A stretch of 59,963 nucleotides of DNA, filler included, from Sluysia triapertura (taxonomy: Eukaryota), in the NCBI GenBank assembly GCA_046118255.1. It is 4 parts of 4 records of this genome, joined end to end, with 100 filler letters (N's around TTAATTAATTAA, not from the genome) between each part and the next. Parts side by side here need not be neighbours in the genome. Positions count along the whole stretch, not along the records: positions 19,218 to 32,153 come from JBJNIA010071393.1; 3 more parts are not named here. One strand, given 5' to 3'. Positions 2,102-32,153 of the stretch are shown here, piece after piece (the stretch's first letter is position 1; every line of letters begins with the position of its first letter). Below the pieces are notes generated by a model. That model had not been told where the DNA came from. It saw only the letters and a list, made by a program, of their open reading frames with translations, and ran no database searches. The translations under genes were made by a program, and so were the position numbers.

Positions 2102-2172
2102 ATATTTTTAGCTTAAGGTTAATGCATTGAATTCTTAATTCAAAAGGTGGTTTGATATATATTCAAAATGTT
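2102..2172 (+). tRNA. trnK: Mitochondrial-type tRNA-Lys(CTT) within NUMT
   Basis: Acceptor ATATTTT/AAAATGT; anticodon arm TTGAA-TT CTT AA-TTCAA. Confidence 0.75.
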
Positions 2173-2178
2173 TTTGGT

Positions 2179-2245
2179 AAAATCTTAGTTTATAAAAAAC
2201 GTAAATTTGCTAAATTTAACGAAAAACCCACAGTTTTAGATTTTT
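2179..2245 (+). tRNA. Mitochondrial-type tRNA, anticodon GCT (Ser1, or mutated Asn GTT), within NUMT
   Basis: Acceptor AAAATCT/AGATTTT; D arm GTTT/AAAC; anticodon arm TAAAT-TT GCT AA-ATTTA; T arm AAAAC/GTTTT. Confidence 0.7.
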
Positions 2246-2248
2246 AAA

Positions 2249-2314
2249 TAAGAGGTAATTTATAAAAAATATAAATTTGTCATATTTAAGGAGACAAAAA
2301 TTTGTTTCTCTTAG
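2249..2314 (+). tRNA. trnD: Mitochondrial-type tRNA-Asp(GTC) within NUMT
   Basis: Acceptor TAAGAGG/TCTCTTA; anticodon arm TAAAT-TT GTC AT-ATTTA; T arm GACAA/TTGTT. Confidence 0.75.
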
Positions 2315-2953
2315 GTGTATAGAAATTTATTAATTTTTATTTTTATATTAAGTTTAGTGTTTTTAGAGGATGGGTTTTTTGTGTTATTTTATAGTTCCTA
2401 GATTAGAAAAATTTTTTTTAAATACTGTATAGTTGTTTTGTATAGATATTATTTTTTTATTGGTTAGTCTTTTCGCTATTTAATTTTCCTATGAATTTAT
2501 AATTCTTATAATTGTTATTAAGATTCGTAGGTTCTATGTGTTTTTTAATTGTCTCATTCGATTTGTTTAGTTTTATAATTGGTTGAGATGGGTTAAGAGT
2601 TATTAGATTTTATTTAATATTATATTGTGTATTCCTTATGTTTTTTTGATTATAATAAAAATATGTCAAAATCTTTACTTACTCTCCTACATATTCAACC
2701 AGAATAGTATTTTTTTACCACATTATGTAGATCTAAGTTAGGAGCTGTTTTAACTTTGGTTATTTTTACCTATGGTGAGAAGATTTTTTATTGTTTTAAG
2801 TTTATTGTTAATAGAAAGAGGTTGTTTGTGTTAGTTTTGTTAGGGTGTGGTTATTATTAATTTGGGTAGGTTCAAAGCCTGTTAAGTTTATTATTTAGAT
2901 TTGAGTTTTTTTGTTTAAAAAAGATTCAGTTGAAGGAGAATGAAAGTTGTAAA

Positions 2954-3012
2954 AAAATTTTAGTTCAACAAAACATTGATTTGTGGAATCAAAGATGAAT
3001 ATTATAATTAGT
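2954..3012 (+). tRNA. trnH: Mitochondrial-type tRNA-His(GTG) within NUMT (degenerate)
   Basis: Anticodon arm TTGAT-TT GTG GA-ATCAA preceded by a TAGTT...AAAC D arm. Confidence 0.6.
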
Positions 3013-3477
3013 TTCAAGGTTTATATAATGAAGTATTGTTTTAGGAATCATGCTATAGATATCATGTTATAGATATCATGCTATAACTAAAAATTGTTGT
3101 GAGGGTTTTGGGTTATGGTTTGTTTTTTGGTTGTTTTTTTATTTGTCTGATATATTTCTATATTTCTTTCACAATTTAATAAATTAGGTGGCTTATACAT
3201 AAAATATAAGGATGATGATGAATTGGAAATGGTTTGGACTTTATTTCTTGTATTTATTGTAATCATTTTAGGTGTACCTAAAATGTTTGTTTTAGGTTAT
3301 TAAAAATTATCTCATTTAGGAGGAAACTTTTATAATGTTTCTTTAGTTGGAAAACAATGGTTTTGATAGAGTAGTTGGTACAAAAATCCTTCTAGGGTAA
3401 TAAGATGTTTAAAATATTATAATGGGTTTTATAATGATGATAATCGTTTAGAATTGTTTTATAATATTTATACAATT

Positions 3478-3772
3478 GTCACAATACAATAACTGTTACT
3501 AAACACACAATACAAAAATAGTTAGTATTAACGTATGTATTGTACTTTAAAGTCCTAAATGTGGTAAATACATTACCACAAAATTCGAAAACACTATTAT
3601 TTAACATGCAAAAATGTTGAAATCAATAAGAAATTTCCATAACTTTTGGTAACACAAAACCAAAATGTAAAGGAAAGTTGTATATTTCAACCCCTATTCA
3701 GCAATAAATGCTCAAATTAATAAGGTCACTGCCAATTATAAAAGTTAATACTACAAAAACCAAGTCATTTAT
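3478..3772 (-). pseudogene. Possible inverted NUMT fragment (nad2/nad4-like)
   Basis: Strand skew flips at ~3470. The minus frame is open if TGA=Trp and reads FPLHFGFVLPKVMEISYW, resembling the P.HFW.P.VME motif. Confidence 0.3.
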
Positions 3773-4021
3773 TAGGAATGGTAATGTGTCACTTAATTGA
3801 CTTTGTCAAATTTAGAGTTTCCGCTTAGAAATTAAGAATTACTTTGAAATAACATACTTCAATAAAGGTAATATGGAATAAGAATAAAATTAAAAATTTT
3901 CATAATAAAATCATCCATAATGTGAAAAAATGTATAAAAATAAAAATATGCGTAATTGAGCCTAATTATGGAATATTATATTTAATATGAAATTATAATT
4001 GATAATAATTTTATAACTTAC

Positions 4022-4102
4022 TCATAAAGGTTTGAATTGATTTCTAAGGCCATTGTGTACGCAGTTAAAGCAGCCATATAATCACCAGCTTGGAAAAGAG
4101 AA
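4022..4102 (-). CDS. Internal exon encoding a TPR motif (co-chaperone type, e.g. DNAAF4/DYX1C1-like)
   Basis: ttatttag|...|gtaagt, 81 nt, symmetric phase 2. Translates SLFQAGDYMAALTAYTMALEINSNLY, matching the TPR consensus. Confidence 0.75.
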
Positions 4103-4769
4103 CTAAATAATTAAATTATTATTTATATAAATTTTAATAAATAATTAAAAATGTTATATATCGAAACTATTGTTTCGACAAAATACAAATTTAAAACAAG
4201 AAAATTAACCGCTTAAGGTTTTTAAAATTAGAATGTATGGTGTATAATTGTGTATCAAGATAAGTATCCCAAAAACCAGTCGATTATTTGAATTGATGTA
4301 AATATAATAATTATTACTATTAAAATAGTTAATATATGGTTTTGATTGATCTAGTGTTTTTGATAATGACCTTATATTTAGATTTGGTGCTAGTAAAATG
4401 TTTTATCACTGGTTTTGATTTGATGGAATGTGCGTCTTATATTTGGGGTTTAGATTAATATACCTTTTTTATACGTGACATAAATAATTTCAATCATATT
4501 TATGATCCTAAAGATGGAAAATCGAAATAGACGATATAGATAACCTGAATCAAGCAAACGAAGCTTAAAAGGTAAAGGTGAATCAGAGAGACTGCATAAA
4601 CAATTTGAATGAAACGCTCCATTTCTTTGATGAACAAACAAAGCAGATAATCACCAAAAACTGCCTAGATATGCAAATCGCGAAATGGAAAAGTAAAGTA
4701 CGAAGAACATATTTAGTTATCTATCTGTAAGTGTATCTATATTTTTATAAACATTTTAATTTTTATATC

Positions 4770-5870
4770 TGTTCAATTTTTAAGGGAGTTAACTCACATG
4801 AATTTCAAGATAAATGGCGTTTATTGATAAAATTTTTGTAAATTTTCTTCGTACTGCAATTTCTAATCATAATAGAAGTAAAATTTCATTAATTAAAGCT
4901 CTTTGTAAATCAGATGCAGATTTTTTTTACTAATTCTTTGATATTTTATTATTATATCAGTAACAAAAACTTTAAACTTTACTTGAACATTAATCTTAGC
5001 GTCTCTGTAGCTACTATTTTCGACACGTTCATGTCATTCAAATGCTTCGAAACATCTAAGGTATCCTTGTCTCAAAACGCACAATTAAAGATAAGTATAT
5101 CAATAACGTTATGTTCGATTTACCTCTCACCACATTCAGATATCTTACGAACTTGAAGATAAATCTTATAATAACCACTACATCAACATATATTTCAAGC
5201 ACGAACAGTATCTAACTCGTTTATCACCATCAATACACTACAATCTACATCGGTCTAAGAATTCAACATTCTACAAACAGTACCAGCAGTATCTCATATA
5301 AATGGCGTCAGGCTTTTTTGGAACAGGATAAATCTGACCTTAAAGGTGAACTACCCTTTTTTATTCTTCATATAGAAATTTCATTATTACTAAATATTTT
5401 TATTAAAACAATCTTATCAAAATATTCAATAGACAATAATTTTAGCGATAAAATCCTACATATAATTTTCAAAATCATTAATTTATATTATAAAACCATA
5501 AAGTCAACACAAAAGAAACCATGTTTTCGAACAACGTAATGTACATAAGTTATCCACAACCAGTATCAATACAATCATGCACAAAAACAATCTCATACAA
5601 CAACCTCAACACTACCGAATCAATAACATTTCTACAATGATACAATTTTATTACATCCAATAAATGGCATTCTTAATTCTATATCTTTCAAAACAACATT
5701 TTTTCTCACAATTCAACAAAAAAACAAGATTATTACAATTTCAGAGCAAAAACATAATTGCATATCACCAACAATCAATAAGACTCTTATTCCACAAACA
5801 ACTTTACGAACAAATAAACAGTATACAGTACTTTTGTTATTACTACCGTCATACATAAATTCATATACAA
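4770..5870 (-). mobile_element. Highly decayed LTR-retrotransposon (Ty3/Gypsy-like) reverse transcriptase
   Basis: Ordered RT motifs across frameshifts: SSP..IYPVPKKPD, CRMLNS.TDVD..INELD, SGYYKI, LRQG, FVTDIII (degenerate YVDD). Confidence 0.55.
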
Positions 5871-6449
5871 ACATTTTAATTTAATTTCCCGGATTCAAGG
5901 CCGGAAAAGTTTTGTTTTATTTTAATATTTTATTTTTTTAGAAATTGTGCCCACTTAAGGCCGTGCGAACCTAGATGGTTATAAATATTATTAGTAAGTG
6001 TTAAACTTGAGATGAGTATATTTCTAAGAATTAAACTTAATAAATAATAAACATAAAAACTATAATTAAGAATGCTTGTAATAAAAAGTAACATGTTTGG
6101 GAGCGTATAAGAAACTTCATTTATTAATAATTTAAAAATTATGATTGTTTTTATTAAATTTTATATATGTACAAATTAAATTATTATTTTTATTATCTAT
6201 TTGCTTAATAAAATTTAATTTAATAAAATTATGATAAATTTCTTTACAAAAACGAGTAATCAAATAAAGTAATAGAGATATATTACACAAAACATCAACG
6301 AAAAAACTATTATTATAAAATGTTAAGGTTAGTAATATTATTGACGAATGATTTATATTTTGTTTGCCATACATTTAAACCTAAACAAACAATAACAATT
6401 ATGATCATAAGTCGAATTTTCAAAATTAATTAACTTTACTTTTTGATCT

Positions 6450-8051
6450 GTGTTGTCCAGTAACTAATTGTAACTAATTGTCCTCGACATTGTTTTGAAA
6501 GTAATTGGTCCTAGAAATCGATGACGATTGATCAATTTGAAGAGAATTCATCAACTCGTACACTCTTTCAAGGTAGAATTTTAAAAGCGAAGTTCTTGGA
6601 CATTGTGAATGTATTTACATGAGACACCAAATTTAACACATGCGCCAGATTGGTTTAAACAGGATGGACATAGAGCTACTGTTTTGTCAATCGAATAGGA
6701 TTCGTTCTTGTTCAAAATCTTGGGTGTTGTAGGAGACGAGATAAACGTATGGAACATATGGTTGTCCGTCGGACTAGCTAAGCACTTCAGTAAGAAAACT
6801 CTTGGTAATTCAAATATAACTTTTCAATACTAATATACAATTTTTTAATCTGGTTTCAGTTGCCCTAAATGAACTGTTCTTATGACATTTGTAATATCAC
6901 CACTTTCATACTGAACGTCACTATCTAATAAAAACATCTGATCCGAAGTGATATAAATATCCATTCCACCATGCGTACCAACACCGGTAATAGTTTCTAA
7001 ACTGGTTGATACAAAATCCGTCAGATCAACACGAAAAGAATCAACCTTTAATGAAGCATCAGCTTCACTTACAACGGTTTTATTTTTAACGAATTTTTTG
7101 TTTAACCAGTAATAAAAGTGACATAAAGAAATAGAATCTACAAGGAAACATTTATGAAGACATTCAATTTCACGAGAATTCTTGATACATTTCAAGTTAC
7201 CGACTGGCAATGGACTGATAAATTGTCTAGATGCTGGTGATAAATCTAGGAAACCTATATTAACATCCGGATCTAATCGTATTCGTTCTGAAGATCTAAA
7301 TACTTGCTCAAGTTCATCATATACTTGCTGATAATCATGAATACTCATGACATATTTATCCTGGCCATAATTTCGAATATAATCGCCAAATTTACAATCA
7401 TTTTTCATGTATGATTCATTAATAAACAAATGTATATTAGTCATATTAACCATTAAAAAGAATACAATACATCAATACCACGAATATTGAATAACCATGC
7501 AATATCATCTAGTGCACTAAAAATACATTATCTACATGATTTTCTTCTAATTGAGTACGGACACGACCAAAATTTCGTCGCCAATTCTCACCAGTCATGT
7601 TCATATCATTTAAAACCATAATCGGCTTTTTTTGGTCTCTATGGTCGTTCAAGCCAAATACCATCAACTAAACCTCGATCAAATTCTTGCAAAATCACAT
7701 CCTCTTTAAGTTTCACTTTCAAATCAGTGTACCATCTAGTGGAAGCTGTGTACTGATATATTCAAACGCGAGAATTTAAGTTTAATAAATGTGTATTCAA
7801 CCATTGACTTATTGTTTGATCTCGAGGATATTCAAAGACTATACAATTTGTATCGACGCACTCTCTATCTGTCATAATGCAGCTAGAGTTTTAGAGCCAT
7901 CAAATCCAGAAATATAATTTATACGCTTATCAAATTCCGATACGCATTCATCATTTTGTTAATCATTCATGCGAATAACATAGGTTTCCACATTTTTCAT
8001 AATCATTGCATATCTAAGCTTAGACAAAATATCTGTTGTATTTTTCTCCAT
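6450..8051 (-). pseudogene. XPNPEP1: Intronless, degraded Xaa-Pro aminopeptidase 1 (aminopeptidase P, M24B) copy
   Basis: ATG 8051: MEKNTTDILSKLRYAM...DKRINYISGFDGS. ORF 6845-7453: SPLPVGNLKCIKNSREIE...FLLDSDVQYESGDITNVIRTVHLG. Multiple stops/frameshifts and no obvious introns. Confidence 0.85.
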
Positions 8052-8199
8052 CAATTACTTAGTGTAAAAATAAAAATAAAAATAAATATATACTTGTAAA
8101 AATAATTTATTTATAGCATTACACGCTATTTGATGCGATACAATCACTATATTTTAAAATTCAAAATCAAATGCTGCTTCGAAATTAAAAAGCTTTAAA

Positions 8200-8420
8200 T
8201 GATCAGAAAGACCGAAGTATCTTCGTTAATCGAAGAGATGTCAAGACAGACCAAAATGTAAATTTTATTGCTATTGAATATTTGATAGTGCCAGTAATAT
8301 ATAGTGACAATTGGAAACGTGACTATCAAAAGGCGTTTAGACTTTAGATTGCATTACGGTGCAATCTAAATACTAATAATACTAAATACTAAATACTAAA
8401 TAATACTAATAATAACAACA
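8200..8420 (+). mobile_element. 3' end of a non-LTR retrotransposon (RTE-like)
   Basis: RPK...DVKTD...DNWKR..QKA remnant, then an 11-bp hairpin TTTAGATTGCA/TGCAATCTAAA (8343-8370) and a (TACTAAA)n-type tail. Confidence 0.45.
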
Positions 8421-8444
8421 ATAACATAATATATTAATTTATAT

Positions 8445-8703
8445 TTAACTCATATCTACTGAGAAAGGTAAATCATTCACCATAATCTTTCCGAAACAGA
8501 AAGAACTTTGCCTTTTTCTTAAATATATTTCATAATCTTCCAGCAATTTGACATTCTCTGGTTCTATATTTTTGAGACAAACAGTATACAACCTATCACC
8601 TAGCTTGTTATCACTGTGGATTCTGTATAGATTATTATGTCTCAATGAAATATTCATCTTCCTTTCCAATTTTCGTATTATTTCTAAAAGATATTCAGGA
8701 TTT
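8445..8703 (-). CDS. Putative terminal exon of an unidentified gene
   Basis: ttacag acceptor then about 85 stop-free codons (NPEYLLEIIRKLERKMNISL...FSVDMS*) with protein-like composition. Confidence 0.35.
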
Positions 8704-9580
8704 CTGTAATGTAAGCATTTGTAAATTATTTTAAATAATTTTAAATTATATTCTTGCTTTTATTGGCATACAATTACGGATTTGGAATCAAAATTAATGT
8801 ATATCCATGGGTTTCTATTACCTATATTTGTTATTCAAGTTTTCAAATAAAAATCTTGAATTTAATGTGTCGTATTCATTTAATCATTCAAGAATTAAAA
8901 TTTTATATCGAATAAAGTGCCTTGAGCACTGTAACAAAGAAATTATAAAACTGAAATTTCATGCTTAATAGAGTGCATTAATATATTTGATGAAAAAAGT
9001 CGTTATCTCCTAAATCTTGAAAATATTTTAAAAAACATGATAAACCATGAATAACATCGTTTATTATGTGGGGCACTTTTGCTTGTAAAATATTAATGAA
9101 TTATATTTATTCATATTTAGCTTTATATATTTAATGGAAAATTTCAAACATTTAATTAAAAACGAACAATTAACATTTAATTTTAAAACTAATAATTTTC
9201 TTAACTAATAAATTAGGCTTTAAAGAATAATAATTTAACAGAAACGAAATTTAACTCTTTATTAATATAAAATAGAACAAAAGGACACATAAAAACACTT
9301 ACACTATTATATGACTGTACAAACGTTATGGTATTCAAATTGTTTGATTTGTTTACACGTTTAAACACACGTTGTTTAGTTATACTATTGGGCATAATAG
9401 CCTTAACCCAATACATTTGAACTTGTGCTACTTTAATTTCTATTCTTGCTTTAGCATTTTGGAGTAATGCATAAAAACACCTTTATAATGTAATGATTGT
9501 AGAAATCTCAAAAATGATAATATAGAGAAAAATACTAATATGACGTAATTTTTCGAATCCAAGTAATAAATTTGACGTAA

Positions 9581-9817
9581 CCTTTTCAGCCCCGGGACCG
9601 CCATATGGCGTCAATGGCGATTTTTACTCTTACACAACTGCTATGCAAGATCCTACTAAAGTAATACGAAGAGCATAATTTTAGCTTTGAACTTTCACCT
9701 ATATATTTTTACTTCACGTCAATATTTACAATTTTCATACATTTTCCCTAAATCATCATCTATAAAGACAATAAATCACCATAAATCTTAAGGAAAAAAA
9801 ATTCGGGGCTGAAGGAG
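9581..9817. mobile_element. piggyBac-type MITE
   Basis: TIRs CCTTTTCAGCCCCG / CGGGGCTGAAGGAG, flanked by GTAA (left) and TTAA (right). Confidence 0.7.
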
Positions 9818-10742
9818 TTAAGTGTTTTAAATAAATTTTTAAAAACAATTTAATGGTTTTAACTGAAGATAAGTTTGGGTGATGAAAGGATTTTGAAATA
9901 ATATAAATGTTTTACGTGGATTTTTAAATATACATTGATGTTTTGACTGAAAGTAATGTTTGGATGTTAAAAGATTGTAAATTAAAAATACATAGAAAAG
10001 AGTGTGGTTTAATGGATATAAAGAAGATGAATTATAGCTTATCTTTTGATACATTCTAAAAAGGTGGTTGTGTGATATTAAAAATATACTTTTGGTTATG
10101 TTGGTACTATGTATGAAAATGTTTATAATAAGCTTTTAAAGTGTGAATTGTAGATTTTGAAAGTGAATGTGATTTTGTTGTATTTAAAAGAAAAATTTTT
10201 AAATAAAATTTGTTAAAATTAATAGGTTGGCCACCACACAAATATATCTTATTGATACATTAGAAATTTTGTATAAATATTAAACCTACTTATTACTTAG
10301 TATGTTGTACTAATAATTTTAAAATTAATCTTTATCATAAAATAAATAATAAAAGTAACGATAAAACCATTAATGATGAAAACAATAGAATTAAAAGCCC
10401 TTAATGCATGATAACTTTAAATATAAAATTCAAAAACATAATTTGGAAATCCAAATACTAAATTTGTTAAATCAAATAAGAATTAAATTATGGTATTTAA
10501 CGTCAAATAGATTTCAAAAAATCGTTCCAGACCATTGTTAGATTAATATCCTGTTCTATTTGTTATAAAAGTGACACTGACGTTATTTCTTGTTTTAGAG
10601 TGGTAATGCTCATTATAAAATCATGTTATATGTTATTGAAAGTTAGGTGCGAGAAAATACTAAAATTTAATATTAAAATATGTAACAAAAAAGAATAAAT
10701 AATTGAAGAAATGGTACTAAAACATTATACCTCAAATCTTGC

Positions 10743-19217: not shown

Positions 19218-19655
19218 AATTTTGAAACGAAATCTAAATTCTGGAATGCAAAAGTATAAAGTACACCAGAAGCTATCACGTCATTGGGCAAAAAATTCAT
19301 TTTTTCTTAATAGAGAAAGTTCAGTCTCGATGGATCGAACGAATTTCATTACTATTGACATCATCTCCGAAAATATAAAGATGGATGATTAATCGTTGAT
19401 TTAGTTAAAATTTCATGTGACAATTACCAAGAAATTATAGGAGAATCATTTCCACATTTAAAAATGGAAATGATCTGATCAAATGCTTTTTAATGCTACC
19501 ATTTTGGACCGGTTAAGCAGAAGTCATAATACATCACCTCCGTAATAAACTTTCGGGTGTTATTCTTCAGACACCTGAGTTAGAAATATCTTTTCAGATA
19601 AATATGAAGCTGATCAACAGTGAATCGAATGTATGAGTTATTAACAAAGTACCGT
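19218..19655 (+). mobile_element. Tc1/Tc3-like transposase remnant
   Basis: FS**RKFSLDGSNEFHYY*HHLRK matches the Tc3-type FSDEKKFNLDGPDG..YYWHDLRK motif. Confidence 0.7.
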
Positions 19656-20202
19656 ATTAGTTTTATTAATTTAGTTTATTGTAATTAATAGTTTTTGTGA
19701 ATATTTACTTTTGTTACTAGTATTTGTTGAAATATTTTTATCTTTTCAATTCCGTAAAAGGGGAATTAACATTGATTATTTATAATTGAGTGATTGTATT
19801 ACAGAAATTATATTCATTAATTTCTGTTTTATTCGTAGAAAGAATGAATTTGTAGGAGCTCTTTCTCTTAATGATTTGTTGGTTATTATTGATCGGTATC
19901 TCTTATTTATTTCCATTTTAATAACATTATATGTATTTTCCTTACGCTGCTTTTTAATTCATGATCGTTTTGACTTGATGATTAAGTGCATCGAGTTCAG
20001 TTCAAATTTCTCTTTCTTTCAACTTTTATCTTGAGTTTATTTCTAAATTTTAAAGTTAATACTTCTAACAATAACAAAACATTTTTAGGTTCTATCGATA
20101 CATTTTTACGAAAAAAACTAAAATCTTACAAAAATGCTGAACTTAATTTTAAAACTGGAAATTAAACTTATTTTTCTTGCAGTTAATTTTAACTTTATTC
20201 AG

Positions 20203-20627
20203 TTTGGACATCGTTTATTGAATGGAAATCAATCTTCATACCATAATCGTCTTGATGAATCTACTATTCCTAATCAACATTCACGTTGTTCTAATGTATT
20301 ATCAAATCAATCTTCGGTGCAAGTTTCTTCCACTGGTACCAATGTCAATTCTAATGTATCTTTAGATTTGGACATCCACCCACCACCACCACCCCAATCT
20401 GCTTCCTCAGGACAGTTAGTTTCATCATCTGGTATTGAAAAACGTAAAGTTCGAAACAGAGTTACATTTGTATCAGAAGACTTAAAACAATTAGAAGAAT
20501 GGTTTAAATTTAATCCACGACCGTCTCGAGATAAATTCCAAGAATATGCAGCAGAACTTAATCGTAGACATCATAATTGTCATAATAAGATCAAACGCAT
20601 TCTCCATGCTCGAAATATTGTATATTG
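20203..20627 (+). CDS. Exon of an atypical homeobox gene, dve/Compass (CUT-class)-like
   Basis: ttcag acceptor. RNRVTFVSEDLKQLEEWFKFNPRPSRDKFQEYAAELN...NIVYW with an insertion between helices 2 and 3. Probable donor TG|GTTCGT. Confidence 0.75.
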
Positions 20628-22909
20628 GTTCGTTTTTTGTTAAGCATTATATTGTAAATTTATTTTAGTACACATTTTAGTGCATATTAAAAAATTCAAA
20701 CTTTTATCTCAAATGTACTTTCTTGAATATATAAGATAAATAAATAAATTTATTCAGTTTAATTTAATAAAGTACAATATGATCATAGATCTCTATATTA
20801 TTGAATTAATTGAATATAAAATTTCAATTAAAGATAATTTTAATTTAAATATATTAAATTATAAACGAAGTAATTGAATTATGTTTTGTGTTAAGTTGGA
20901 ATTTGAATTTGATATTTAGTTGAATTATGAGTTGTATCGATTTATAATTTGCTTTTGAATTTTAAAATAAGCCTTGGATTGTAAATAAAATTTAAATTAC
21001 ATTTTCATACTAACTGACGTTCGATCTTGAGGGTCAGCATCATCTGGCTTAACCATCGAATGTTTGAAAATTAATATTGGTTTTTAAAAATACTTTCTTG
21101 ATAAAACTTATAATTTTTAAAAATATTCTGGTCTTTCTTTTTAATGTATATATCAATGGTAGCACTTTTTATTTCTATTGTGTCAAATTGATTGATATTT
21201 TGAAAACTGTAACCAGTTTCATTTATTAATAATATCAAGTTCAACAATTATTAATTTTCAATATTTTCCTGTTTCTCTTTCTTTATTTAACTTTTTATTA
21301 CTGTTTCTCATATCAAATCAATGTACAAATTATTAATAGTTAACCACTATAAATAAGTTAAAAAGCAAACAGTCTGTTACAGATAAAAACATTTAGAATC
21401 CCATATACAATTTCGAAACTTTTGGTTATTAATACTAATGAATGCTTATTCTGTGATACAAAATGCCTCTTGATATAAATATAAAATCATTATTAGAAAG
21501 AATCTTGGTTTATTCTTAAAATAATAATAATAATAATAAGAAATAATAGTAATAATAGTATTAATAATAATAATAATAAACATAAAATAAATTTCATCTT
21601 TCATTGTCATCATTCATATCATTATAATTACCGTTATCATCCTGAATGTTCAATTAAATTTATGTAATAGCTTCCAATTCATATTTCACAGGAGCAACCT
21701 AAAAGTAAATTGAAATTTTATAATATTGTGTATTGTCGAACATATATCGAACAGTGTAATAAATGTAAATTGAACATACAATTATTCGAACATATGAATT
21801 AACAATTATTGATTAATTTAAAGTTTGTTATTCGAACATTTTAACAATCATTAAAATATTATTAATTTGTTCTAGTTGGATTGTCAAATATTTTATTTTT
21901 AAATATTTTATTTATTGGAAATTTTATCATTACATTTTTGTGAGTAATTCTTTAATTTTAATTATTTATTTAATTTTAATTTTAATTATTTAATCAATTA
22001 ACTTTAATTAGACTAACAATTAATTTTTGAAATTATTAGCTTTTGAAAAATTATTTGTTTTAATCTTTTAATATTTGTTTCAATCCGATTAAGGTCGGAT
22101 TGAAACTATTTGCAATCAAAACACAATTTTTTATAAACATTTCATAAAAACTTTCCGTAACATTCAAATATTATTCAAGAATCTCCATCTTGTTTCAATT
22201 TCGTCACGATACTCTTTACCTTTAACATTTATTTCGAAAGCTACGTTAGTTTAATTATTTTTAAGGACGATTCCTTAGTGTATCATAGGTATGACTCAAA
22301 ATCATTTTTTAACTAATTTCCTGATCTTATCACAGATCAAACGAAAAATATATATTGTTAAAATCTTCATCATTAAAAATTAACTAGCGTAGTTAATTTA
22401 GTAAAGTTTATATTACTATTATAAAGTTGTATATTTTTTCTTTTGAAATTTTTTGAGAATAAATTACACTAATCCTTAATTCCGTTGTATTATATAATTT
22501 ATATAACTTCAACTATAAAATTGATTGTTTTATGATTTCAATAGCTAGAATTTATCTCTAGCAACGTAAAATATAATCTAAAGATTCCATATAAAGGAAT
22601 CTACGAAAAATCATCTCATAACTTTATTATTATCAATTTTTAGATAAAATTTCATTAATATCGTTACTTACCTCCAGTTAGTTAAAGATTTAATTAAACC
22701 TTGCAGTTTTCAGTAGTTTTTAAGGATTTTCTGTTGATTCACCAAAAATCCAATGGTTGGCCCTAACTGGTAAGTCCAATACGTTGGTGAACTGACGTTA
22801 AACTTTTGATTTATTCTATTGCTTTACTTTTAATTTTTTCATAATATTATGGACAAATAAAAAAGTAGTTATTAATGCATTGATTTTAAAACTAAATTTT
22901 ATTTCATAC

Positions 22910-23085
22910 TATTAGATTTCATTAAATTGACTGACGGGATTCGAACTTGGGATCTTTCACCTCACAGCTGTGAAGTTCGATTCTCTGACCACTAGGCATA
23001 GGTCCGACTAACAATTTTATTTTATTATAGCAATTATACTATTATTATTCTAAATGGAACTTTTTAGGCCCATACCTCAACAATA
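22910..23085 (-). mobile_element. tRNA-derived SINE-like repeat, copy 2
   Basis: A box GCCTAGTGG, B box AGTTCGAATCC; homologous to 10743-10915. Confidence 0.65.
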
Positions 23086-23169
23086 TAACTGCTAATATTA
23101 CAAAACTTAACTAAAATTTATTTAATCATGTGGGTGCCTTGTATAATTAATTCCTATCTTAATTTTTTT

Positions 23170-24080
23170 ATTCAAAACTCAAACGGTGTTCCATGGAAAA
23201 TTGTCGGTGTTGATCGTAATGGAAATCGTACAGCATATGAAAGTGTGAAAAGTTTAGAGTCAAAGTTTTATCATTGAAATATAATGTGCAACGTAAAGCC
23301 ATTACAAATAGGATTCATTCTGACGCTAAAAAGTACTTAGGATAAATTAAACTTGAAAAATCAATATATCAATATTTCTATCATTTACAAGCCGATCTAA
23401 TTAAATCAGAATTGAAGTGTTTAATACAAAACGCTATACTAGAATGCGCATCAATCAACAAAACTAACAGGATCATGGGAAGTCCACAACATGACATTAA
23501 AGGTTTATTTAACAATTTTTCATACTTAAATAATGAAAGAAAGAGGAAAATTTAGAAATGAATTTGAAATGTATGTAGAATAATGAGAATAAGAACCTTA
23601 AACATTTTCCATTGGAAAATTGAGTGCGACAATAAAAAAATTCATTGAATTATAAAAACTAAAGTTATATTCATTATTTTTATTTTAATGTGAGAAATAA
23701 TTCATGTAAACACAGACGAAAACAATAGATAATCATTAATCAACACTATATTTGCTGTATCTCATAAAATCTGGCAAGCCTTATCATGTAATTGTCAAAA
23801 CTGTTATTGTGGGACTAATCCCAAGATAATGTTTGATTGTAAAACTGAAGAGTGATCAGATAATGTGAAATTATTAAAGAGAATATTTGTGCAATTTTAA
23901 AACACAATAATGCTTCCGCAATGCAGGACAACAGAAGATTCGTGATTTTTGGTAACTTTTTTTAGCTTATTTATTTCAATAATTTTAAATATTTTTAAAG
24001 ATATTCTCCTTTAATTTGTATTTTTAGAAAAAAAGCAAAATCCCCTTTTATTTTTCTTTTAAATTTCTTTTTTGGAAAAT
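23170..24080 (+). mobile_element. Gypsy-like integrase remnant, purine tract and third copy of the LTR-like repeat
   Basis: PWKIVGVD and RIHSDA motifs; GAAAGAAAGAGGAAAA at ~23535; 23570-24080 aligns with 17090-17530 and 15170-15540. Confidence 0.55.
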
Positions 24081-25586
24081 AGTTTTTTTTAATTTATTTT
24101 GGAAGCTTTAGGCAAAATTCCCAAAAGAAGAATTGTTGCTCCTAAATTAATTTTAAATTAATTCGATGTTTTGATTGAAATTCAAATTACAATTTAATTT
24201 CAAAATTTTAATCATAAATATGGGGTTTTGGTATATATTGAGATGAACCTTAACATTTTTGTTTCTACTGACAATTTAAAGCAAATTATTACTTTACATT
24301 ATTGATCATTTGAAAATATTGATTTTTTGTTTATATTTTAGTTTCATTTTTTTAAATTATACTTTATTATAGCTCTGATGGTATTTTATTCAATTTGTAA
24401 TTTTTTTATTATTATAAATTCAAAATGATTTTTAATATTTTCAATCTTTAAAAGAACGAGATTGATGGACATTTGGTATAATAAATGTCTCTAATTATAA
24501 AAAAATTACCTACAGTTTGTCACCGGTCATAAATGACAAGATTAGAAGTCGATTATTCTACTTGTAAATTTAAATATGGATTAAATAATAATAGCATTAA
24601 ATTGAATTTTTATGTATGAATTTTAGTTTTAAGATTTGTACAAATTTGTTTTGGAGTTTAGTTTAATGTTAAATTAAAATATAATTCAGATTGTTAGATT
24701 TTGCGTTAGTAATACCTGTGTAGGTCTAATTTTATTTAATTAAAGCTTATGTTAATATTTCAGTTTTTATTTTTTTAATTTTATATTCTAAGCTGTTAAT
24801 TAATTGTAAAATTATTTCTAAATTATGATTTTTTTGAATATAATTGTTCTACTGTTTAACCATACATAATATGTAAGACTCATGTTTCTAAAAAGAAATT
24901 CATATGTATTTAAAAAGTATCTAACGTTTGTTGTGAGTTTTAAGATTAAAACTTAAGCTTGTTTTACAAATAACTAATAAAATTTGTATCACCGAGTAAT
25001 ACCAACTTTTTTCTTTTGATTATAAATATTTAACAAATGAGTGCTTTTATTGATAATCACTTAAAGTTAACGTAGTAACTTTATTTTCTGGTCATCATTT
25101 TTCTTTATTGTGTACATGTTTGTAGAAATTTTTAATGTAATTTTTATTTTGAATCTTTTGAAAATTTTGAAAAAAGTGATGTTCAATTATTAATGATAAA
25201 ATATACAATTTTAAAAAATGAATGAATTATTTTGTTACAAATATAACATCAATGAACTGTTGAAATTAGTAGTCCTTGAAACATTCTTGAATCTTAATGT
25301 TAAATCACTCTATTTATATTTTACAAATGTTTAATAGGAATCTTGTTTTAAATCTTGAACTAATTTTGTCATACTATAAAGTGTTCTGTTCCACTAAAAA
25401 TATAGCAGACATTTTGCACAGTAAATTATTAAAAATTAATCAAAAATAGCAAAATTATACAATATATTATTAAAAATTATGTAAAAACAAAAAAGTTATT
25501 AATAATATTTTTACAAATACCAAAAATGATAAATATATTATCGCAGAAATAAGAGAAAACAAATTTAAATGTTTTAGAATCTTTAT

Positions 25587-25832
25587 CTATGTTTTCCCTT
25601 CATTGGCGTTAATAAGTGCCACAATTTTTTCTTGAGTAACCTAAAATAAAAGAAATATAAAATTGTTACATTATAAAATGTGTGTAGAGAAAAATAAGTG
25701 AATCTAAAGAAATACAGAAGCCTCTAAGATAAGCATCTAAAATAACACAGTAAAAAAGAATAGGGTGAAAAACTTACTTCCAAAAGTATCTGCTTGATGA
25801 ATGAATATAGTGGAAAACGGCAGCTTTATAAT
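25587..25832 (-). CDS. Putative small spliced exons (25778-25832, 25587-25640) of an unidentified transcript
   Basis: Clean GTAAGT...TTTTAG intron at 25777-25641; reading frame unresolved. Confidence 0.3.
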
Positions 25833-26706
25833 CTATATTAGACCCATAAACGTAATTGAATTGAACCAATTTGAAAGAAAAAATAAAATTTAATTAAAAA
25901 AGGGAAGTATATTCTAATTTACATGTACGTACCTACTTATTTAGCATGCCAATTTCTAAAAAATTGACCAAATTGATGATCCAAAATAGTCGGAAAATAA
26001 TTATTGTCATTAAATATGCATAATCATTAGTGAAATACATTGATTAACTTTTTAATTAATAAGTACATTTATTTAAAACAATACGATATCATAATGCTTT
26101 ACATGCAAATAATACACATATTTGATAAAAATTATGAATGAAAATTATTCGGCTATATTAAGCGCCTTGCAAACTATACTTGCGTATGTTTTTTCCTTTT
26201 TCTGATGAAATATCGGCTTCCCGCCCTGTGTAGATTATAGCAGGACCGACGCTCTAAGACACAACTTGAATAAATCCTTTGAGCGTTCCGTTTTTATCCC
26301 TTAGAATTGTGACAAAATAAAATGATAAATTATTCTAAACAATAAAAAATTAAATATATTCCTTTTTTGCATTATATGAGATACTTTTCTATGGACTGAT
26401 TGAAATTAGTTGATTTAGGTGAAATTAGTTGAAATTAGTTGATATGTTGAATTAGGTTAAAAAATAAAGAGGAACGCTGGGTTATGACTCATAATATAAA
26501 AATGAAATAAGTATCATTAAGAAATCAAAATAAAACATTATGAGGAATTATGATGACAAAATAAGTGTATAAAATATTTAAATCAAAATAAAAGAATGAA
26601 GAATATTAAGAAAGAACCCTTTCTAAGGTTTTACTTGTTAAAATTTGTTAAAATATTAAAGTACATTTATAAATTAATTTAATTAAAAATTGTTCAACTT
26701 TGTAAC

Positions 26707-27924
26707 TTAATGAAAAATGTTATCAAGCCAGCATCCTTTATGTACTAAAGGCAAGTCAACAGATATAGAAGAACAGCAAGGTTCGTGCTTGTCATTGTTA
26801 TTGTGTGTTTCTGTATTAGAAGTAGTATAAGATAAGGAGTTAGTATTTTCATGATTCTGTGATAAAAACATAGGGTCCTTTTTTATCAAAAAATCATATA
26901 GATTTATAAACTCCTTGGCCAACTGTTGGCAGGAAGTTTTCGGTGGGAACGGGTAAAGTAACTTCAACACCCTTCTAGTTTTGGTTATTGGATTTAAAGA
27001 AGTTTGGGGTATTAAATTAGTACAGTTCAAATTAATCACCCCTTTTAACCACCCATAGGGAACCCGTAGGGTTTTTATTATTAGTTCTGGATACGTCGAT
27101 ACTAAGATTTTATCGTATAGCGCCGCTAGTCAGAATTCTCTTATATCTGAAAGATCTTTAGCGTTATTAAGATGGTCCTCTTTCAGACCATGATCCACTG
27201 TCAAATAATTTTTTATACGAATACGCGGCCTTAAAAGCGCCTCCCCGTGGAACAATATATGATAAGGCATAAAGCACATTCGGAGAATGTGATGCCTATC
27301 ATCGAAACCTAGCGCAAATTGGGCGGAAACGAATATTAGTTCCCCCACACACGACATTGGTGTCTCTGAGTCGTGTGAATACGTCAAACTCTCTTGCCAG
27401 TTATACATATTGATTTCGTCCTTATGGTATATTAAAGGGCGCTTCTTAAAATCAATAGCTTTCTCTGTTTGGGCCAAGAGTACCGCAAAAGTTTCAGGTA
27501 ACTCTGTTGTTTCGATATGGATGGTACAAGACGGGCTAAGGTTAGTTATTAACACTGAAGAGTATCTTTGTATTCTCGATAACAATGGGATACCTTCTAT
27601 AGTGATTATAATCTTAAGCGTGCCCCTAGCGGCAGCAATAATTATGGGTCTGTTGTTATAAGAAAATCCCCTTAGCTGATTTATGCATACGGGCGATTGG
27701 ATATTGTCTATTTTAAATAGATGTGTGATGAACCTATCGTCCAATTCACACTTCAAGATATTAGGGGTGGTATTCGAATTTAAAAAATGACATGGTGTTT
27801 TGTTATTACCGCAGAATCGGTCGATCCCATTGTAGAAAGGTATGATATTACTAATGACGCGTGCTTGTGTTTTTTGTGGTGGTGTATTGTTGTTTGATGG
27901 TATGATGTTGTTTGTTTGAGACAT
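26707..27924 (-). CDS. Intronless orphan gene: 264 aa, extended to 405 aa by putative UGA-CUAG readthrough
   Basis: ORFs 27130-27924 and 26707-27039 are in the same frame, joined by 30 sense codons (LAALYDKILVSTYPELIIKTLRVPYGWLKG). The only stop is TGA at 27132-27130, followed by CTAG. GC content is visibly higher than the flanks. Confidence 0.7.
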
Positions 27925-27939
27925 ATTTAATCTGAATAA

Positions 27940-28041
27940 TGTGTTCTGTTTCCTACGAACAATTATGAATATTCTTAAAATGGGTTCGCCTACGATAAAC
28001 GCTTTATCTTATAAAAGGACGCTCTCGTAGGATTTTAACGC
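27940..28041 (-). promoter_or_regulatory. Repeated hairpin/TATA leader upstream of the orphan gene
   Basis: CCTACGA...TCGTAGG inverted repeat enclosing TTTTATAAGA on the minus strand, ~90 nt upstream of the ATG; homolog at 59848-59963. Confidence 0.45.
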
Positions 28042-28842
28042 GACTTAAAAAATGATTGAAGATAAAGATTCTTAAAGTAACAATGTTAACTCACAAGGTT
28101 TTATTCTCTAATGGAATCTTTAATGAATGCTCAATGACAATTAAACGTTAATCTAGATTTATTTTTTAAACAGTTTCAAAAATTTTAATGATACGTGATA
28201 AGTCCCAATTCAATTTATCAAACTTATCGATCTTTTTAATACTAAAATGTAAAATAGTTACTTCTTAAGGAGGTTACTCTCTTTTAATAATTAAATTAAT
28301 TCTCGATTATCTTTTTTCTTAAATAGAACTGAACTGTGCTCGTCTAACAACAAAAGAATATAAGTAAAATAGAGTTTTAATTTCAATTGAACTCTCTTGA
28401 AATACAAACCTTTCGTAATTAGTAATTACCTGTTAACTTTTAGTTAAAATCCCCTTTTTTAATCCTTACTATGAAATTTATAATTAATAACTCAAACTAA
28501 AACACGAATGTTTATTATGTAAAATAATGATGAAAAAATACAATAATTATACAAGGATTTAATATATTATCAATAAAATATTAACAAAGAATCTTGGATA
28601 TTAAGTTGATATTAACCCTAAGAATTATTCTTGGGTACTTAATGAATATAATTAGAAGTTTATGTGTATTTTAAAACGCCTATTACTAGGGTTAAAAACT
28701 TATATAAAATAAGCTTACTTAAATAAAAACAGAAAATTTTTGAAAATAAATTGTTTCAATTCCTTCCGTTTAGATTGTTGATATCGACACTAGGATTTTC
28801 CAAATCAATCTTTTTTGCTCCAACTATAAAATAAACCAAATG

Positions 28843-28975
28843 ATTTTAGTTCGAATGTCAAATAGACCAAATGAATTCCAAAAAACAAACGAATTTAGTT
28901 TGAATACCAAGTAGACCGAATGAATTTCAAAAACAACTGAATTTAGTTCGAATACCAAATAGATTTCCAAAAAAC
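28843..28975 (+). repeat. Minisatellite, ~48-bp unit x ~2.6
   Basis: TTTAGTT(C/T)GAAT..CAA.TAGA recurs three times. Confidence 0.85.
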
Positions 28976-30104
28976 TTTAAAATTAGTTATAATTTCTTAA
29001 CATGAACTTGTGTCATTTCGTGAGTAAAATTAACAATTTATATATTTCGATACATCCGATGAATCGTTAATAATTATTCGTAATTTGATTTGGTTAAAAT
29101 AAGTGACATTTTTTCATAAATATTTATAATAATAAAATGATTGGCAATTTTTCATAAATACTATTAAATTTGAATAATGAATTTGGATAAAATAAATAAC
29201 AGTTTTTTATAAATATTTATAATAATAAAATGATTGGCAATTTTTTCATAAATGCTGTTTATTAATATAATATGGTATTGTTTATAATTATTTACAATAA
29301 TAAATAATATTGTTTATTTTTCGAATAATATGTTTTATCATTATCTACAAATTTATTATTATTATTATTATTTTCATTAAAATTATTCACTATTACAAAA
29401 ATTTTAATATTATTATTATTTGCTAAATTAACTATTATTAAAATTTTACAAAAATTTCAATTTTCTTACAATATTATTGAACAACATTATTCTTTAAACA
29501 ACATTATTCTTTACAAATTTTTTTACTTTTTTAAGTATAAACACTAAGTTTATACAAATTAATATAATTGTCATTAAAAATTAGATCTAAATAAAGCTAC
29601 TCTGATCTACAATATTTAATTTTGGGTGATAATAATTATAATTATCATTCGAAAGTGTTATATTGTAAACTACGCGAAGGAATATTTTAGACGAATTTTC
29701 AACACTTCTTTAAACCTTATAAACATTTTTATAATAAATAAATTTTAAATAAATAAACTTATAATAAATATTTTTAATTTCGTTTAATTCGTAAGAGAAA
29801 AATATTAAAAAATTAACTTCAAATAATTATTAATAATTTAATGAGGTATTTAAATTAGTATTTAAAATCTAGAATTGATACATTAAAGACCTAATAAGTT
29901 TAAAATCTTTCTTTTTATGTCTTTTAGTTTTTCATTTTGTTTATATCATTCCTTATTTATAATTGTGAGTTCTATTTTATTTGTAGCGTAGGCTTTTCTT
30001 TATTATACCTTACCATGAATTGATTAGAGTAATTAATTCTGAATTAGTAAAGATCCATAAACTCTCTGTACAATGTATATCGCATAAAGTAATAATAACC
30101 TTAA

Positions 30105-30144
<40 letters not shown>

Positions 30145-30869
30145 GTTTTGTTATTTTATTTTTTCTGAAGAAATTTCTTTATTTGTTTTGTCACATAGCG
30201 ATATTCTTTATTTTTATATAATTCGGAAAATGATGTCGTATATTTCTTTTTGTTTCTATTTATAATTAAATGAAGATATTCGTTAACTGTTTTAATACTT
30301 TAATTTATTATTGGAAATAAAAAAATATTTTAAATATTATGAAAGAAAAATTCATTTCATAGCAACCTTTGTTATCTTTTCAGCAATTGTAGAAAATTCA
30401 AAATTAAATTCAAAAATTAGATGAGATTTTAAATGTAATCTTCTTTGTAAACGTGGCCAATGAACATCGTCAACTACACTAAAAGGTTTATTGATAAATT
30501 TACGACTACAATTTATAAATGTCCTATTTAAATATTAGATTAAAGCATGCTTAATCTTGAAAAATTTTCTAATAGTAGAATTAAGTTTTCATGCTCAAAA
30601 TTTGAAAATACATTTGGCATTTATGCATTTTCCTTAACAAAGACTTTTTAATTACTTTTTATTACTCAGATATTATTTGATAGTTTATAAATAAATAAAT
30701 GAAGAGTTAACAACAATAAAATTGAAATGTGTGGTAGCCGAAACTCCGAAACAAATTAATTATATATTATTAAAAACGTCATAAACCCATTAGTCACTAA
30801 TCAACATTGTAACCTTCCAATTCACAATGTATGAACATGATAGCTTATTATTTAACAATATACGCCTGG

Positions 30870-31390
30870 TCATTTAGTAATTAACAATAACATATTGAAA
30901 ATGTGGACACTTTATACGCGCTCTCGCAGACGTTAACTTGGTCAAGCACTGTCTAAAATAATCCATAATAAACATAATTGTTTCTCCAAATTAAACAATA
31001 AAGAGAGATATTTTTAATCAAAAACTTAAGAGATAATCCATCGTGGCCATTTTAAACAGCAATTTTTTGATTAAAATATTCCAATTCAAAAGTACAAAGT
31101 AGCCAATGAATTTGATTTATCAATATTCTTTAAATAACGATAGTAACTATCTTAAAAGCTTTAAAATTTTTTTAATTGATGAACCTGATCGTCTTATTAT
31201 TCACGATTTCTCAGTAAACAATCGCAAAACAGTGCTATTATGTTTTCTTAAGTGTTAGTTCAGCAAAATTCAAAGAATAAAATCAAAAATCGTTCAGATA
31301 AATATATAAAGAACAAAAACTACAACAAAAAAGTGGTTAAATTGGCTTGTTACATTTAAAAATCAAATTGTGTTCATATCGACTTTAGTC
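30870..31390 (-). mobile_element. Possible pogo-type DDE remnant
   Basis: MFIMDYFRQCLT resembles the LVMDSFRAHLT motif; heavily decayed. Confidence 0.25.
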
Positions 31391-32153
31391 ATAGTTGCTA
31401 TAGTGAAATAAATTGTGTACATACAAAAGATCCTTATACAAATCTTCAAATTAGAATAAAAGAAATTTAAAATCTTATTGAAGGCACATGATGAAACTTC
31501 AAAATATGAAAATTTTATATGAAAATTTATTAATTCACAACAATGGTGAAGTCGAGATTATCTTAGCAATCTCTATGGGTGATCATCGACTCTGCAGAAG
31601 AACGATTCATCCAAACTGTGTCGAGAAGTTTTATCTTTTTTATTTTTATTTCGTAAAACTCTGAATAAAACAATGTATCGGTGCTATCTTATTTTTGGGA
31701 ACCAGAAAACAAGCTGGTGTAAGACACTTTGAAGAGACATTACTTTGAAGATGGAAGACAAGAAAAATAAAGCATAATTCAATTAATAATAAATTTTGAA
31801 AATGAAGACAAAGTTCACAAATCGTCTAGAGTTAGGCATCTGAGACATGAATCGGACATACTAGGCATTACACACTACCTTAACCAAGTTAATAAAGTGT
31901 TTCGTGAATACTTTCTAAAAGAAAAGTAAGCACTAATATATAATATTTTGGCAAGTCTGATTTGTCAATTTCATTAAACATTTCCAAAATATTGTAAATA
32001 TTATCTAGTAAACTTATAATTTGATATCTTTTCAAAGTTTCATTTTTATTATTTTGTAAAGTTCAAAATATCAAAAATTTTCAAGTTTTTCGATTATTAG
32101 CCAATTAGTAAATATCACATAAATCAAAGTATTAGACATAGTCATTATAAATA

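What the first reader, a model, noticed from the sequence alone, without database searches (positions are those of the whole stretch)
26707..27924. Orphan intronless gene with a single in-frame UGA in the canonical UGA-CUAG readthrough context (264 aa / 405 aa)
Seen: the two minus-strand ORFs are one frame. After ...DIREF the sequence reads TTC TGA CTAG CGG and stays open for 140 more codons to TAA at 26707, with no frameshift or other stop. Established: UGA-CUAG is a well-known programmed readthrough context (alphavirus nsP3/4 UGA-CUA; mammalian AQP4, OPRL1, LDHB, MDH1). Inference: a random nonsense mutation would rarely land before CTAG in an otherwise intact frame, so this may be a recoded gene making short and C-terminally extended products. 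I do not recognise the protein family.
Basis: partly seen in the sequence, partly recalled or inferred. Interest (0 to 1): 0.85.

Follow-up and report, generated by a model that had tools for sequence, protein, structure and literature searches.

The report
Stop-interrupted copy of orphan multicopy gene
The in-frame TGA followed by CTAG is real and both halves belong to one ancestral 405-codon gene, but it most likely marks a recently broken copy of an uncharacterised multi-copy gene family, not a gene built to be read through.

Summary
On the minus strand an ATG at 27924 opens 264 codons. Then comes TGA (27132-27130) followed by CTAG, and the same frame runs 140 more codons to TAA (26709-26707). 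Only 4 of 100,000 shuffles keep that downstream frame open.

The gene is not a singleton. Contigs of four public runs hold many diverged copies (80-99% identity). Of the 40 best-supported differences, 26 are synonymous against 21% expected, so this is a real coding family under purifying selection.

Among 1.8 billion representative proteins there is one distant relative, P0001 (365 aa). It aligns collinearly and without a gap across both halves. It has a sense codon (TAC, Tyr) where the window has TGA. The best-conserved block of the whole protein starts four residues after the stop. So the stop interrupts the protein core and does not sit at a natural C-terminus.

I found no SECIS, no tRNA gene, no stable RNA structure after the stop and no credible intron.

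Best reading (about 0.58): a young nonsense-broken copy, or a null allele or base error, that happens to lie in a leaky context. Functional readthrough (about 0.2) and a UGA-sense genetic code (about 0.07) are not excluded. I could not read what the paralogs carry at this codon. The protein's function is unknown.

The parts
27925..28052 (-). 5' flank of the gene, shared with other family copies. It contains a 7-bp inverted repeat CCTACGA...TCGTAGG. In runs X2-X4 the similarity ends near 28052.
   Evidence: depth table, loose ends at 28052; sequence.
27133..27924 (-). First 264 codons (ATG 27924 to TTC 27135-27133). They align with residues 2-259 of P0001.
   Evidence: In one search, 38 of the 40 listed paralog differences lie here and are mostly synonymous.
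27130..27132 (-). In-frame TGA. It aligns with Tyr263 (TAC) of P0001 inside an ungapped, poorly conserved 7-residue stretch (REF*LAA against ITPYRNM).
27126..27129 (-). CTAG directly 3' of the TGA. It is made of the CTA (Leu) codon and the G of GCG (Ala).
   Evidence: context literature (PMC4132726).
26710..27129 (-). 140 further sense codons in the same frame. They align with P0001 residues 264-365.
27028..27120 (-). Best-conserved block of the whole protein: LYDK(I/V)LV..PE(L/I)IIK.L..P.GWL.G..NL. It starts 4 codons after the stop.
   Evidence: 35% identity and 63% positives over 78 residues, against 24% over the N-terminal part.
26707..26709 (-). TAA that ends the 405-codon frame.
26643..26706 (-). 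AT-rich 3' flank, laid on by very many contigs. Clipped ends pile up at 26642/26643, and the clipped consensus still resembles the window beyond that point.
   Evidence: tables 2 and 7.

Best explanation
This is one copy of an uncharacterised, intronless, multi-copy protein-coding family whose ancestral product covers the whole 405-codon frame. In this copy a single point change created a TGA inside the protein, between two conserved blocks. Normal termination there would give a 264-residue fragment lacking the most conserved part, so the copy is best read as a young pseudogene. A segregating null allele is possible, and a base-calling error less likely. The change is recent, which is why the 140 downstream codons are still open. 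The CTAG after the stop is simply the pre-existing Leu-Ala codons (CTA GCG). It makes the stop intrinsically leaky, so if the copy is transcribed a few percent of ribosomes may still make full-length protein, as a by-product and not a programme. Shown: one frame, homology across the stop, a sense codon in the homolog, a multi-copy family under purifying selection. Inferred: that the TGA is private or recent to this copy, and that it is not decoded.
For:: contigs of four runs hold many diverged copies (in X1, 2756 laid pieces at 80 to over 99% identity, with up to 27 distinct contigs at a single ORF position), so broken copies are expected; 27 of the 40 listed differences are at third codon positions and 26 of 40 are synonymous against 21% expected (p = 3e-9), so the family is or was a working gene; the only homolog, P0001, aligns across both halves (tblastn gives a single HSP 27879-26887, E = 1.6e-25) with no gap at the stop and TAC (Tyr) at the aligned codon; the most conserved block begins 4 residues after the stop, so the stop is not at a natural protein end., table 8: paralogous contigs cross the stop and the downstream part without gaps at 10-19% divergence (for example 26953-27205 and 26817-27075), so the downstream part is coding in the family as a whole; under neutral change the downstream frame stays open with probability 0.64 at 1% divergence, 0.42 at 2% and 0.01 at 10%, which is compatible with a recent event; no SECIS, no tRNA gene, and no stable RNA structure 3' of the stop (z = +1.9).
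Against: Only 2 of 406 codons in this frame are followed by CTAG, so a random nonsense change landing here is roughly a 1-in-200 coincidence. The top-40 list of differences has no row at 27130-27132, although the neighbouring 27120 is listed as different in most copies of all four runs. If every paralog carried one and the same sense codon here, I would have expected such a row. This is an argument from absence, because 267 rows were not shown. The homolog is distant (24-35% identity) and the aligned 7-residue stretch is not conserved, so the ancestral codon cannot be named. The organism and its genetic code are unknown.
Confidence: 0.58

Rival explanations
1. Functional readthrough. The UGA is decoded by a near-cognate tRNA often enough, helped by the CUAG context, that the gene still makes useful full-length protein. 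Either it is a recoded gene with two products, or it is a nonsense change that was tolerated because it fell in a leaky context.
For: TGA-CTAG is present. This context alone gives about 1.5% readthrough, and 3.5-31% in natural mammalian cases (PMC4132726). The downstream frame is fully intact and is the best-conserved part of the family. No uniform alternative letter at the stop was listed among the paralogs.
Against: The only homolog has a sense codon here, and the stop interrupts a continuous conserved polypeptide and does not end a complete one. No stimulatory RNA structure follows the stop. A few percent of full-length product is a poor way to express a protein's core. The case was selected because of its context. 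In humans only 4 of 23 UGA-CUAG genes carry a coding signature downstream.
Confidence: 0.2
2. The organism reads UGA as a sense codon (most likely Trp) in its nuclear code, so this is an ordinary uninterrupted 405-residue gene ending at TAA.
For: The aligned residue in the homolog is aromatic (Tyr). The ORF ends with TAA. The genome is extremely AT-rich, and the 'homeodomain' neighbour that suggested an animal is only a borderline match, so a protist source is not excluded.
Against: The frame has a single TGA against three TGG Trp codons. Treating TGA as sense creates no other long ORF in the 12.9-kb piece. The homolog's contig has no in-frame TGA in either ORF. Nuclear UGA reassignment is rare.
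Confidence: 0.07
3. Assembly or base-calling error: the real genome has a sense codon here.
For: The piece comes from a fragmented assembly and a repeat family, where consensus errors and collapsed paralogs are more common.
Against: A single substitution error producing exactly a stop is uncommon. X1 holds 177 pieces at 99% or more identity to the stretch, and no high-support difference was listed at 27130-27132.
Confidence: 0.06
4. Selenocysteine codon, mRNA editing (UGA to UGG), or a short in-frame intron that removes the stop.
For: A 63-nt GT...AG stretch (27188-27126) is a multiple of three, ends exactly at CTAG with a CTGAC branch-like motif, and would remove the TGA.
Against: No SECIS or any other Rfam match at E up to 1, and the homolog has Tyr, not Cys, at the site. 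The candidate intron is homologous coding sequence in P0001 (G246, K248, L252, N254, D257 and I261 conserved). The A of UGA is preceded by G, a poor context for known A-to-I editing enzymes (my own knowledge).
Confidence: 0.03

Closest known systems
Vertebrate UGA-CUAG readthrough genes (OPRL1, OPRK1, AQP4, MAPK10, MDH1; Loughran et al. 2014, PMC4132726)
   Same: Identical stop and 3' tetranucleotide (UGA CUAG), and an open frame after the stop.
   Different: In those genes the stop ends a complete protein, the extensions are short (13 to about 30 residues), and UGA-CUAG is conserved across vertebrates. Here the stop sits inside the conserved core, the 'extension' is 140 residues and holds the best-conserved block, and the only homolog has a sense codon.
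Alphavirus nsP3/nsP4 opal (UGA-CUA) readthrough
   Same: UGA followed by CUA, with a large functional downstream part.
   Different: The viral stop separates two distinct mature proteins and is a regulated expression device. Here one polypeptide is interrupted, and no evidence of viral origin was found.
Young pseudogenes (single-nonsense copies) in multi-copy gene or mobile-element families
   Same: Many diverged copies, a family-level purifying-selection signature, and one copy with a single stop and no other lesion.
   Different: No hallmarks of a defined mobile element were found (no terminal inverted repeats, no poly-A tail, no long terminal repeats), so the way the family multiplies is unknown.
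P0001 (365 aa; Logan contig of run SRR22824324, locus L001)
   Same: Collinear homolog of the whole 405-codon frame (24% identity in the N-terminal part, 35% after the stop); also without any Pfam family.
   Different: It is uninterrupted, lacks the Asn/Thr-rich C-terminal tail, and sits 155 nt behind another ORF on a 1964-nt contig. The window copy has no such upstream partner.

Membership tests
Programmed stop-codon readthrough gene (UGA-CUAG class) | UGA followed by CUAG | tested here: met
   TTC TGA CTA GCG.
Programmed stop-codon readthrough gene (UGA-CUAG class) | Protein-coding signature continues after the stop | tested here: met
   4 of 100,000 shuffles stay open; homology to P0001 downstream of the stop.
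Programmed stop-codon readthrough gene (UGA-CUAG class) | The stop codon and its context are conserved in homologs | tested here: not met
   The only homolog has TAC CGA AAT at the aligned place. Paralogs could not be read at this codon: one search shows only 40 of 307 differences, and its cap is one call.
Programmed stop-codon readthrough gene (UGA-CUAG class) | The stop ends a complete protein and the extension is an add-on | tested here: not met
   The stop lies between conserved blocks of one continuous polypeptide in P0001, and the strongest block is downstream.
Programmed stop-codon readthrough gene (UGA-CUAG class) | Measured readthrough (footprints, peptides, reporter) | not testable with these tools
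   No RNA run holds the stretch.
Selenoprotein gene | SECIS element in the 3' UTR; Cys or Sec at the site in homologs | tested here: not met
   No Rfam match at E up to 1 in 19218-32153; the homolog has Tyr.
Nuclear genetic code with UGA as sense | In-frame TGA at conserved positions of other genes of the genome | not testable with these tools
   The piece holds no other well-conserved gene. Reading TGA as sense gives no further long ORF, which is uninformative.
DEDD / RNase T-like 3'-5' exonuclease fold | Significant profile match and the acidic Exo I-III residues | tested here: not met
   The only hints are weak: Atlas feature scores of 0.75-0.82 for both P0001 and the window's N-part and an NCBIfam match at E = 0.076. 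There is no Pfam RNase_T match at E up to 10. hhalign against E. coli DnaQ gives probability 0.1%. By eye, no conserved D-x-E.
DNA transposon or retroposed copy | Terminal inverted repeats and a transposase domain, or a poly-A tail with target-site duplication | tested here: not met
   Only AT-rich chance-level inverted matches; no transposase Pfam; no poly-A after the ORF.

The most novel reading that the evidence does not exclude
The TGA is shared by diverged, otherwise intact paralogs and is decoded. That would make this a family in which a stop codon inside the conserved core of the protein is kept and read, by efficient UGA-CUAG readthrough or by a lineage-specific UGA-sense code. Full-length protein would then depend on recoding, not merely be extended by it.
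Probability: 0.15. Interest if true: 0.65.

Novelty: new member of a known kind. Interest (0 to 1): 0.27.

Why it matters
If my reading is right, the finding is ordinary: one more broken copy in a repeat-like gene family, and a reminder that a leaky stop context alone does not show recoding. Two things keep some value. First, the family is essentially unknown. It has one distant relative among about 15 billion predicted proteins and no domain match, yet it shows many copies and clear purifying selection. Second, a stop in a naturally leaky context inside a conserved core would be a clean natural test of how much function basal readthrough can rescue. If the TGA proved conserved among paralogs, it would be an unusual case of an essential internal recoding site.

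Tried and rejected
- **Short in-frame intron.** A 63-nt GT...AG stretch (27188-27126) would remove the TGA. Rejected because that stretch is conserved coding sequence in P0001.
- **Selenocysteine.** No SECIS, and Tyr in the homolog.
- **Suppressor tRNA nearby.** No tRNA gene found.
- **Readthrough-stimulating RNA structure.** The 126 nt from the stop fold worse than shuffles (z = +1.9).
- **More relatives.**
  - The search for homologous proteins with the 264-aa part, with its last 80 aa, and with the three-row alignment found nothing beyond P0001.
  - P0001's cluster has one member.
  - The exact 264-aa product is not on record.
  - Viral contigs, metagenome contigs and genome contigs gave no relative, by protein patterns or by a degenerate DNA pattern for the conserved block.
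- **Fold.** AlphaFold2 on P0001 plus the two window pieces gave pLDDT 30 and was useless, so I ran no fold search.
- **Families.** Pfam, PHROGs, NCBIfam and PDB sequence searches gave nothing significant.
- **DEDD-exonuclease lead** from the Atlas: not supported by hhalign against E. coli DnaQ.
- **Transposon ends.** None convincing.
- **Other copies inside the piece.** None.
- **Variant-code ORF scan of the piece.** Uninformative.
- **Depth peaks on the flanks.** I do not use them as copy numbers, because depths of unrelated AT-rich contigs are summed there.

Full report
**Observation**

The minus strand reads ATG at 27924, then 264 sense codons ending ...GAT ATA AGA GAA TTC. Next comes TGA at 27132-27130, followed directly by CTA GCG GCG. 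The same frame then continues for 140 sense codons to TAA at 26709-26707. The frame has no stop other than this TGA and the terminal TAA, while the other two frames have 35 and 37. Only 4 of 100,000 shuffles of the downstream 420 nt keep it open. The ORF is a 35-41% GC island in DNA of 16-30% GC.

**One gene, not two**

Pfam finds nothing in either half. A word-indexed search of 5.8 billion protein clusters finds nothing either. An exhaustive phmmer search of 1.84 billion representatives finds a single relative, P0001 (E = 1.1e-5).

- P0001 is 365 aa and comes from a 1964-nt Logan contig (L001).
- BLASTP aligns P0001 residues 2-259 with the window's first half (E = 4e-12).
- It aligns residues 267-344 with the second half (E = 4e-15; 35% identity, 63% positives).
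- tblastn of P0001 on the piece gives one HSP from 27879 to 26887 that runs straight through the TGA (E = 1.6e-25).
- Around the stop the two sequences are in register without a gap: window D-I-REF*LAA-LYDK against P0001 E-I-ITPYRNM-LYDK.
- The TGA therefore corresponds to Tyr263, codon TAC. That 7-residue stretch is not conserved, so the ancestral residue of the window's lineage cannot be named.
- The block that begins four residues after the stop, LYDK(I/V)LV..PE(L/I)IIK.L..P.GWL.G..NL, is the best conserved of the whole protein.

The 405-codon frame is thus the ancestral protein. The stop lies inside it, between two conserved blocks, and not at a natural C-terminus.

**The gene is multi-copy and selected**

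Four public runs hold parts of the stretch. When their contigs are laid at 80% likeness or more, X1 gives 2756 pieces: 177 at 99% or more, 456 at 95-99%, 1206 at 90-95% and 917 below 90%. Up to 27 distinct contigs differ from the window at a single ORF position. X2-X4 give 69-116 pieces each.

I do not read the summed depths as copy numbers, especially on the AT-rich flanks. The number of distinct contigs still shows a family of many diverged copies.

- Of the 40 best-supported differences, 27 fall on third codon positions (p = 1e-5).
- 26 of the 40 are synonymous, where 21% would be expected (p = 3e-9).
- The family therefore evolves as a working protein-coding gene.
- Only two of the listed sites lie after the stop. 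One is a synonymous CTA-to-TTA change at 27120; the other is a Ser-to-Pro change.
- Paralogous contigs cross the stop and the downstream part without any gap at 10-19% divergence, for example 26953-27205 and 26817-27075 (table 8).
- A neutral AT-rich sequence would rarely stay gap-free at that divergence, so the downstream part is coding in the family as a whole.

**What the stop most likely is**

Three points lead me to read this TGA as a recent point mutation in one copy, or a null allele, or less likely a base error.

- Broken copies are expected in a family with many copies.
- The single homolog has a sense codon at the site.
- Termination here would cut off the most conserved block.

A simple neutral simulation keeps the downstream frame open with probability 0.64 at 1% divergence, 0.42 at 2%, 0.12 at 5% and 0.01 at 10%. 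The event would therefore have to be young, which is unremarkable for one member of a large family.

**Tests of other ways to pass the stop**

- No Rfam family, SECIS included, matches at E up to 1 anywhere in the piece.
- There is no tRNA gene.
- The 126 nt from the stop fold less stably than shuffles (z = +1.9).
- A 63-nt GT...AG stretch (27188-27126) would remove the stop in frame. It is conserved coding sequence in P0001 (G246, K248, L252, N254, D257, I261), so it is not an intron.
- A UGA-sense nuclear code cannot be tested on this piece. Reading TGA as sense yields no other long ORF. The frame has three TGG and one TGA. The homolog's contig has no in-frame TGA.
- The neighbouring 'homeodomain' ORF, which might have argued for an animal, is only a borderline match (25.4 bits against a 22.9 cut-off, with a 13-residue insertion). 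Its best PDB hit is an FF domain at E = 0.019. The source organism therefore stays open.

**The context argument**

UGA-CUAG is a genuine leaky context. UGA-CUA alone gives about 1.5% readthrough, MDH1 about 3.5% and OPRL1 about 31%. Yet of 23 human genes with UGA-CUAG, only four carry a coding signature after the stop (PMC4132726).

In this frame 2 of 406 codons are followed by CTAG, so a random nonsense change landing there is roughly a 1-in-200 coincidence. That raises the odds of functional readthrough. It does not outweigh the low prior, the selection of this case for its context, or the position of the stop inside the protein core.

One observation points the other way. The top-40 difference list has a row for 27120, where most copies in all four runs differ from the window, but none for 27130-27132. 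If all paralogs shared one sense codon there, I would have expected a row. It is the main reason I keep about 0.2 on functional readthrough and about 0.07 on a variant code.

**What the protein is**

Unknown. There is no significant match in Pfam, PHROGs, NCBIfam or PDB sequences. AlphaFold2 with the three available rows failed (pLDDT 30).

Language-model look-alikes for both P0001 and the window's first half lean weakly toward DEDD/RNase T-like exonucleases (scores 0.75-0.82). NCBIfam gives an insignificant DEDD match (E = 0.076). hhalign against E. coli DnaQ gives no support (probability 0.1%), and I see no conserved D-x-E. I therefore record this only as an untested lead.

No transposon or retroposon hallmarks flank the gene. 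No relatives turned up in viral, metagenome or prokaryotic genome collections.

**Verdict**

- The 'one gene' reading is confirmed.
- Programmed readthrough is not supported, though not excluded.
- The most likely reading is a young nonsense-interrupted copy of an uncharacterised multi-copy family, in a context where some full-length protein could still leak through.
- The decisive test is to read the codon at 27132-27130 in the diverged paralogs and in raw reads of the source.

Noticed in passing
window 20134-20643 (+): A 169-aa ORF with a borderline homeodomain match (Pfam 25.4 bits against a 22.9 cut-off). It carries a 13-residue insertion before helix 3 and ends at TAA right after ...IVYWFVFC, so the WFxNxR end of helix 3 is missing. 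No continuation exon with a QNRR-like motif was found within 4 kb. The best PDB sequence hit is an FF domain (E = 0.019). It may be a divergent or decayed homeobox exon.
   Followed up: partly
L001 1-354 and 1658-1790: On its 1964-nt contig the homolog P0001 lies 155 nt behind the end of another ORF (a partial 117 aa with a CPEC motif and a basic Lys/Arg-rich tail; no Pfam match). It is followed by a 64-nt tandem repeat of 2.1 copies at 90% match. This two-ORF layout could be a virus or a mobile element. The window copy has no such upstream partner.
   Followed up: partly
window 26643-26706 and 27926-28078: The gene's flanks attract far more contig depth than the ORF in all four runs (for example 788,853 against about 2,000-10,000 in X1). 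The 3' flank is low-complexity AT-rich sequence and may collect unrelated contigs. The 5' flank (27977-28027, with the inverted repeat CCTACGA...TCGTAGG) is not low-complexity and may be a separate, more abundant repeat or a shared promoter.
   Followed up: no
window 26165-26305: A patch of about 140 nt with higher GC in otherwise AT-rich spacer, 400 nt downstream of the gene. It has no Rfam match, and its folding is only slightly better than shuffles (z = -1.6 and -1.3 on the two strands).
   Followed up: partly
window 28833-28963, 29088-29245, 30100-30150, 21517-21594: Three copies of a unit of about 49 nt, a 65-nt direct repeat spaced 93 nt apart (92% identity), and long (TTA)n/(TAA)n microsatellites that pair as inverted repeats 8.5 kb apart.
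   Followed up: no
window 27993-28100: Contigs of X3 and X4, labelled as other organisms, match this upstream stretch with no difference, while their ORF-covering contigs are 14-20% diverged. The four 'organisms' may be very close relatives, or this stretch may be a highly conserved repeat.
   Followed up: no
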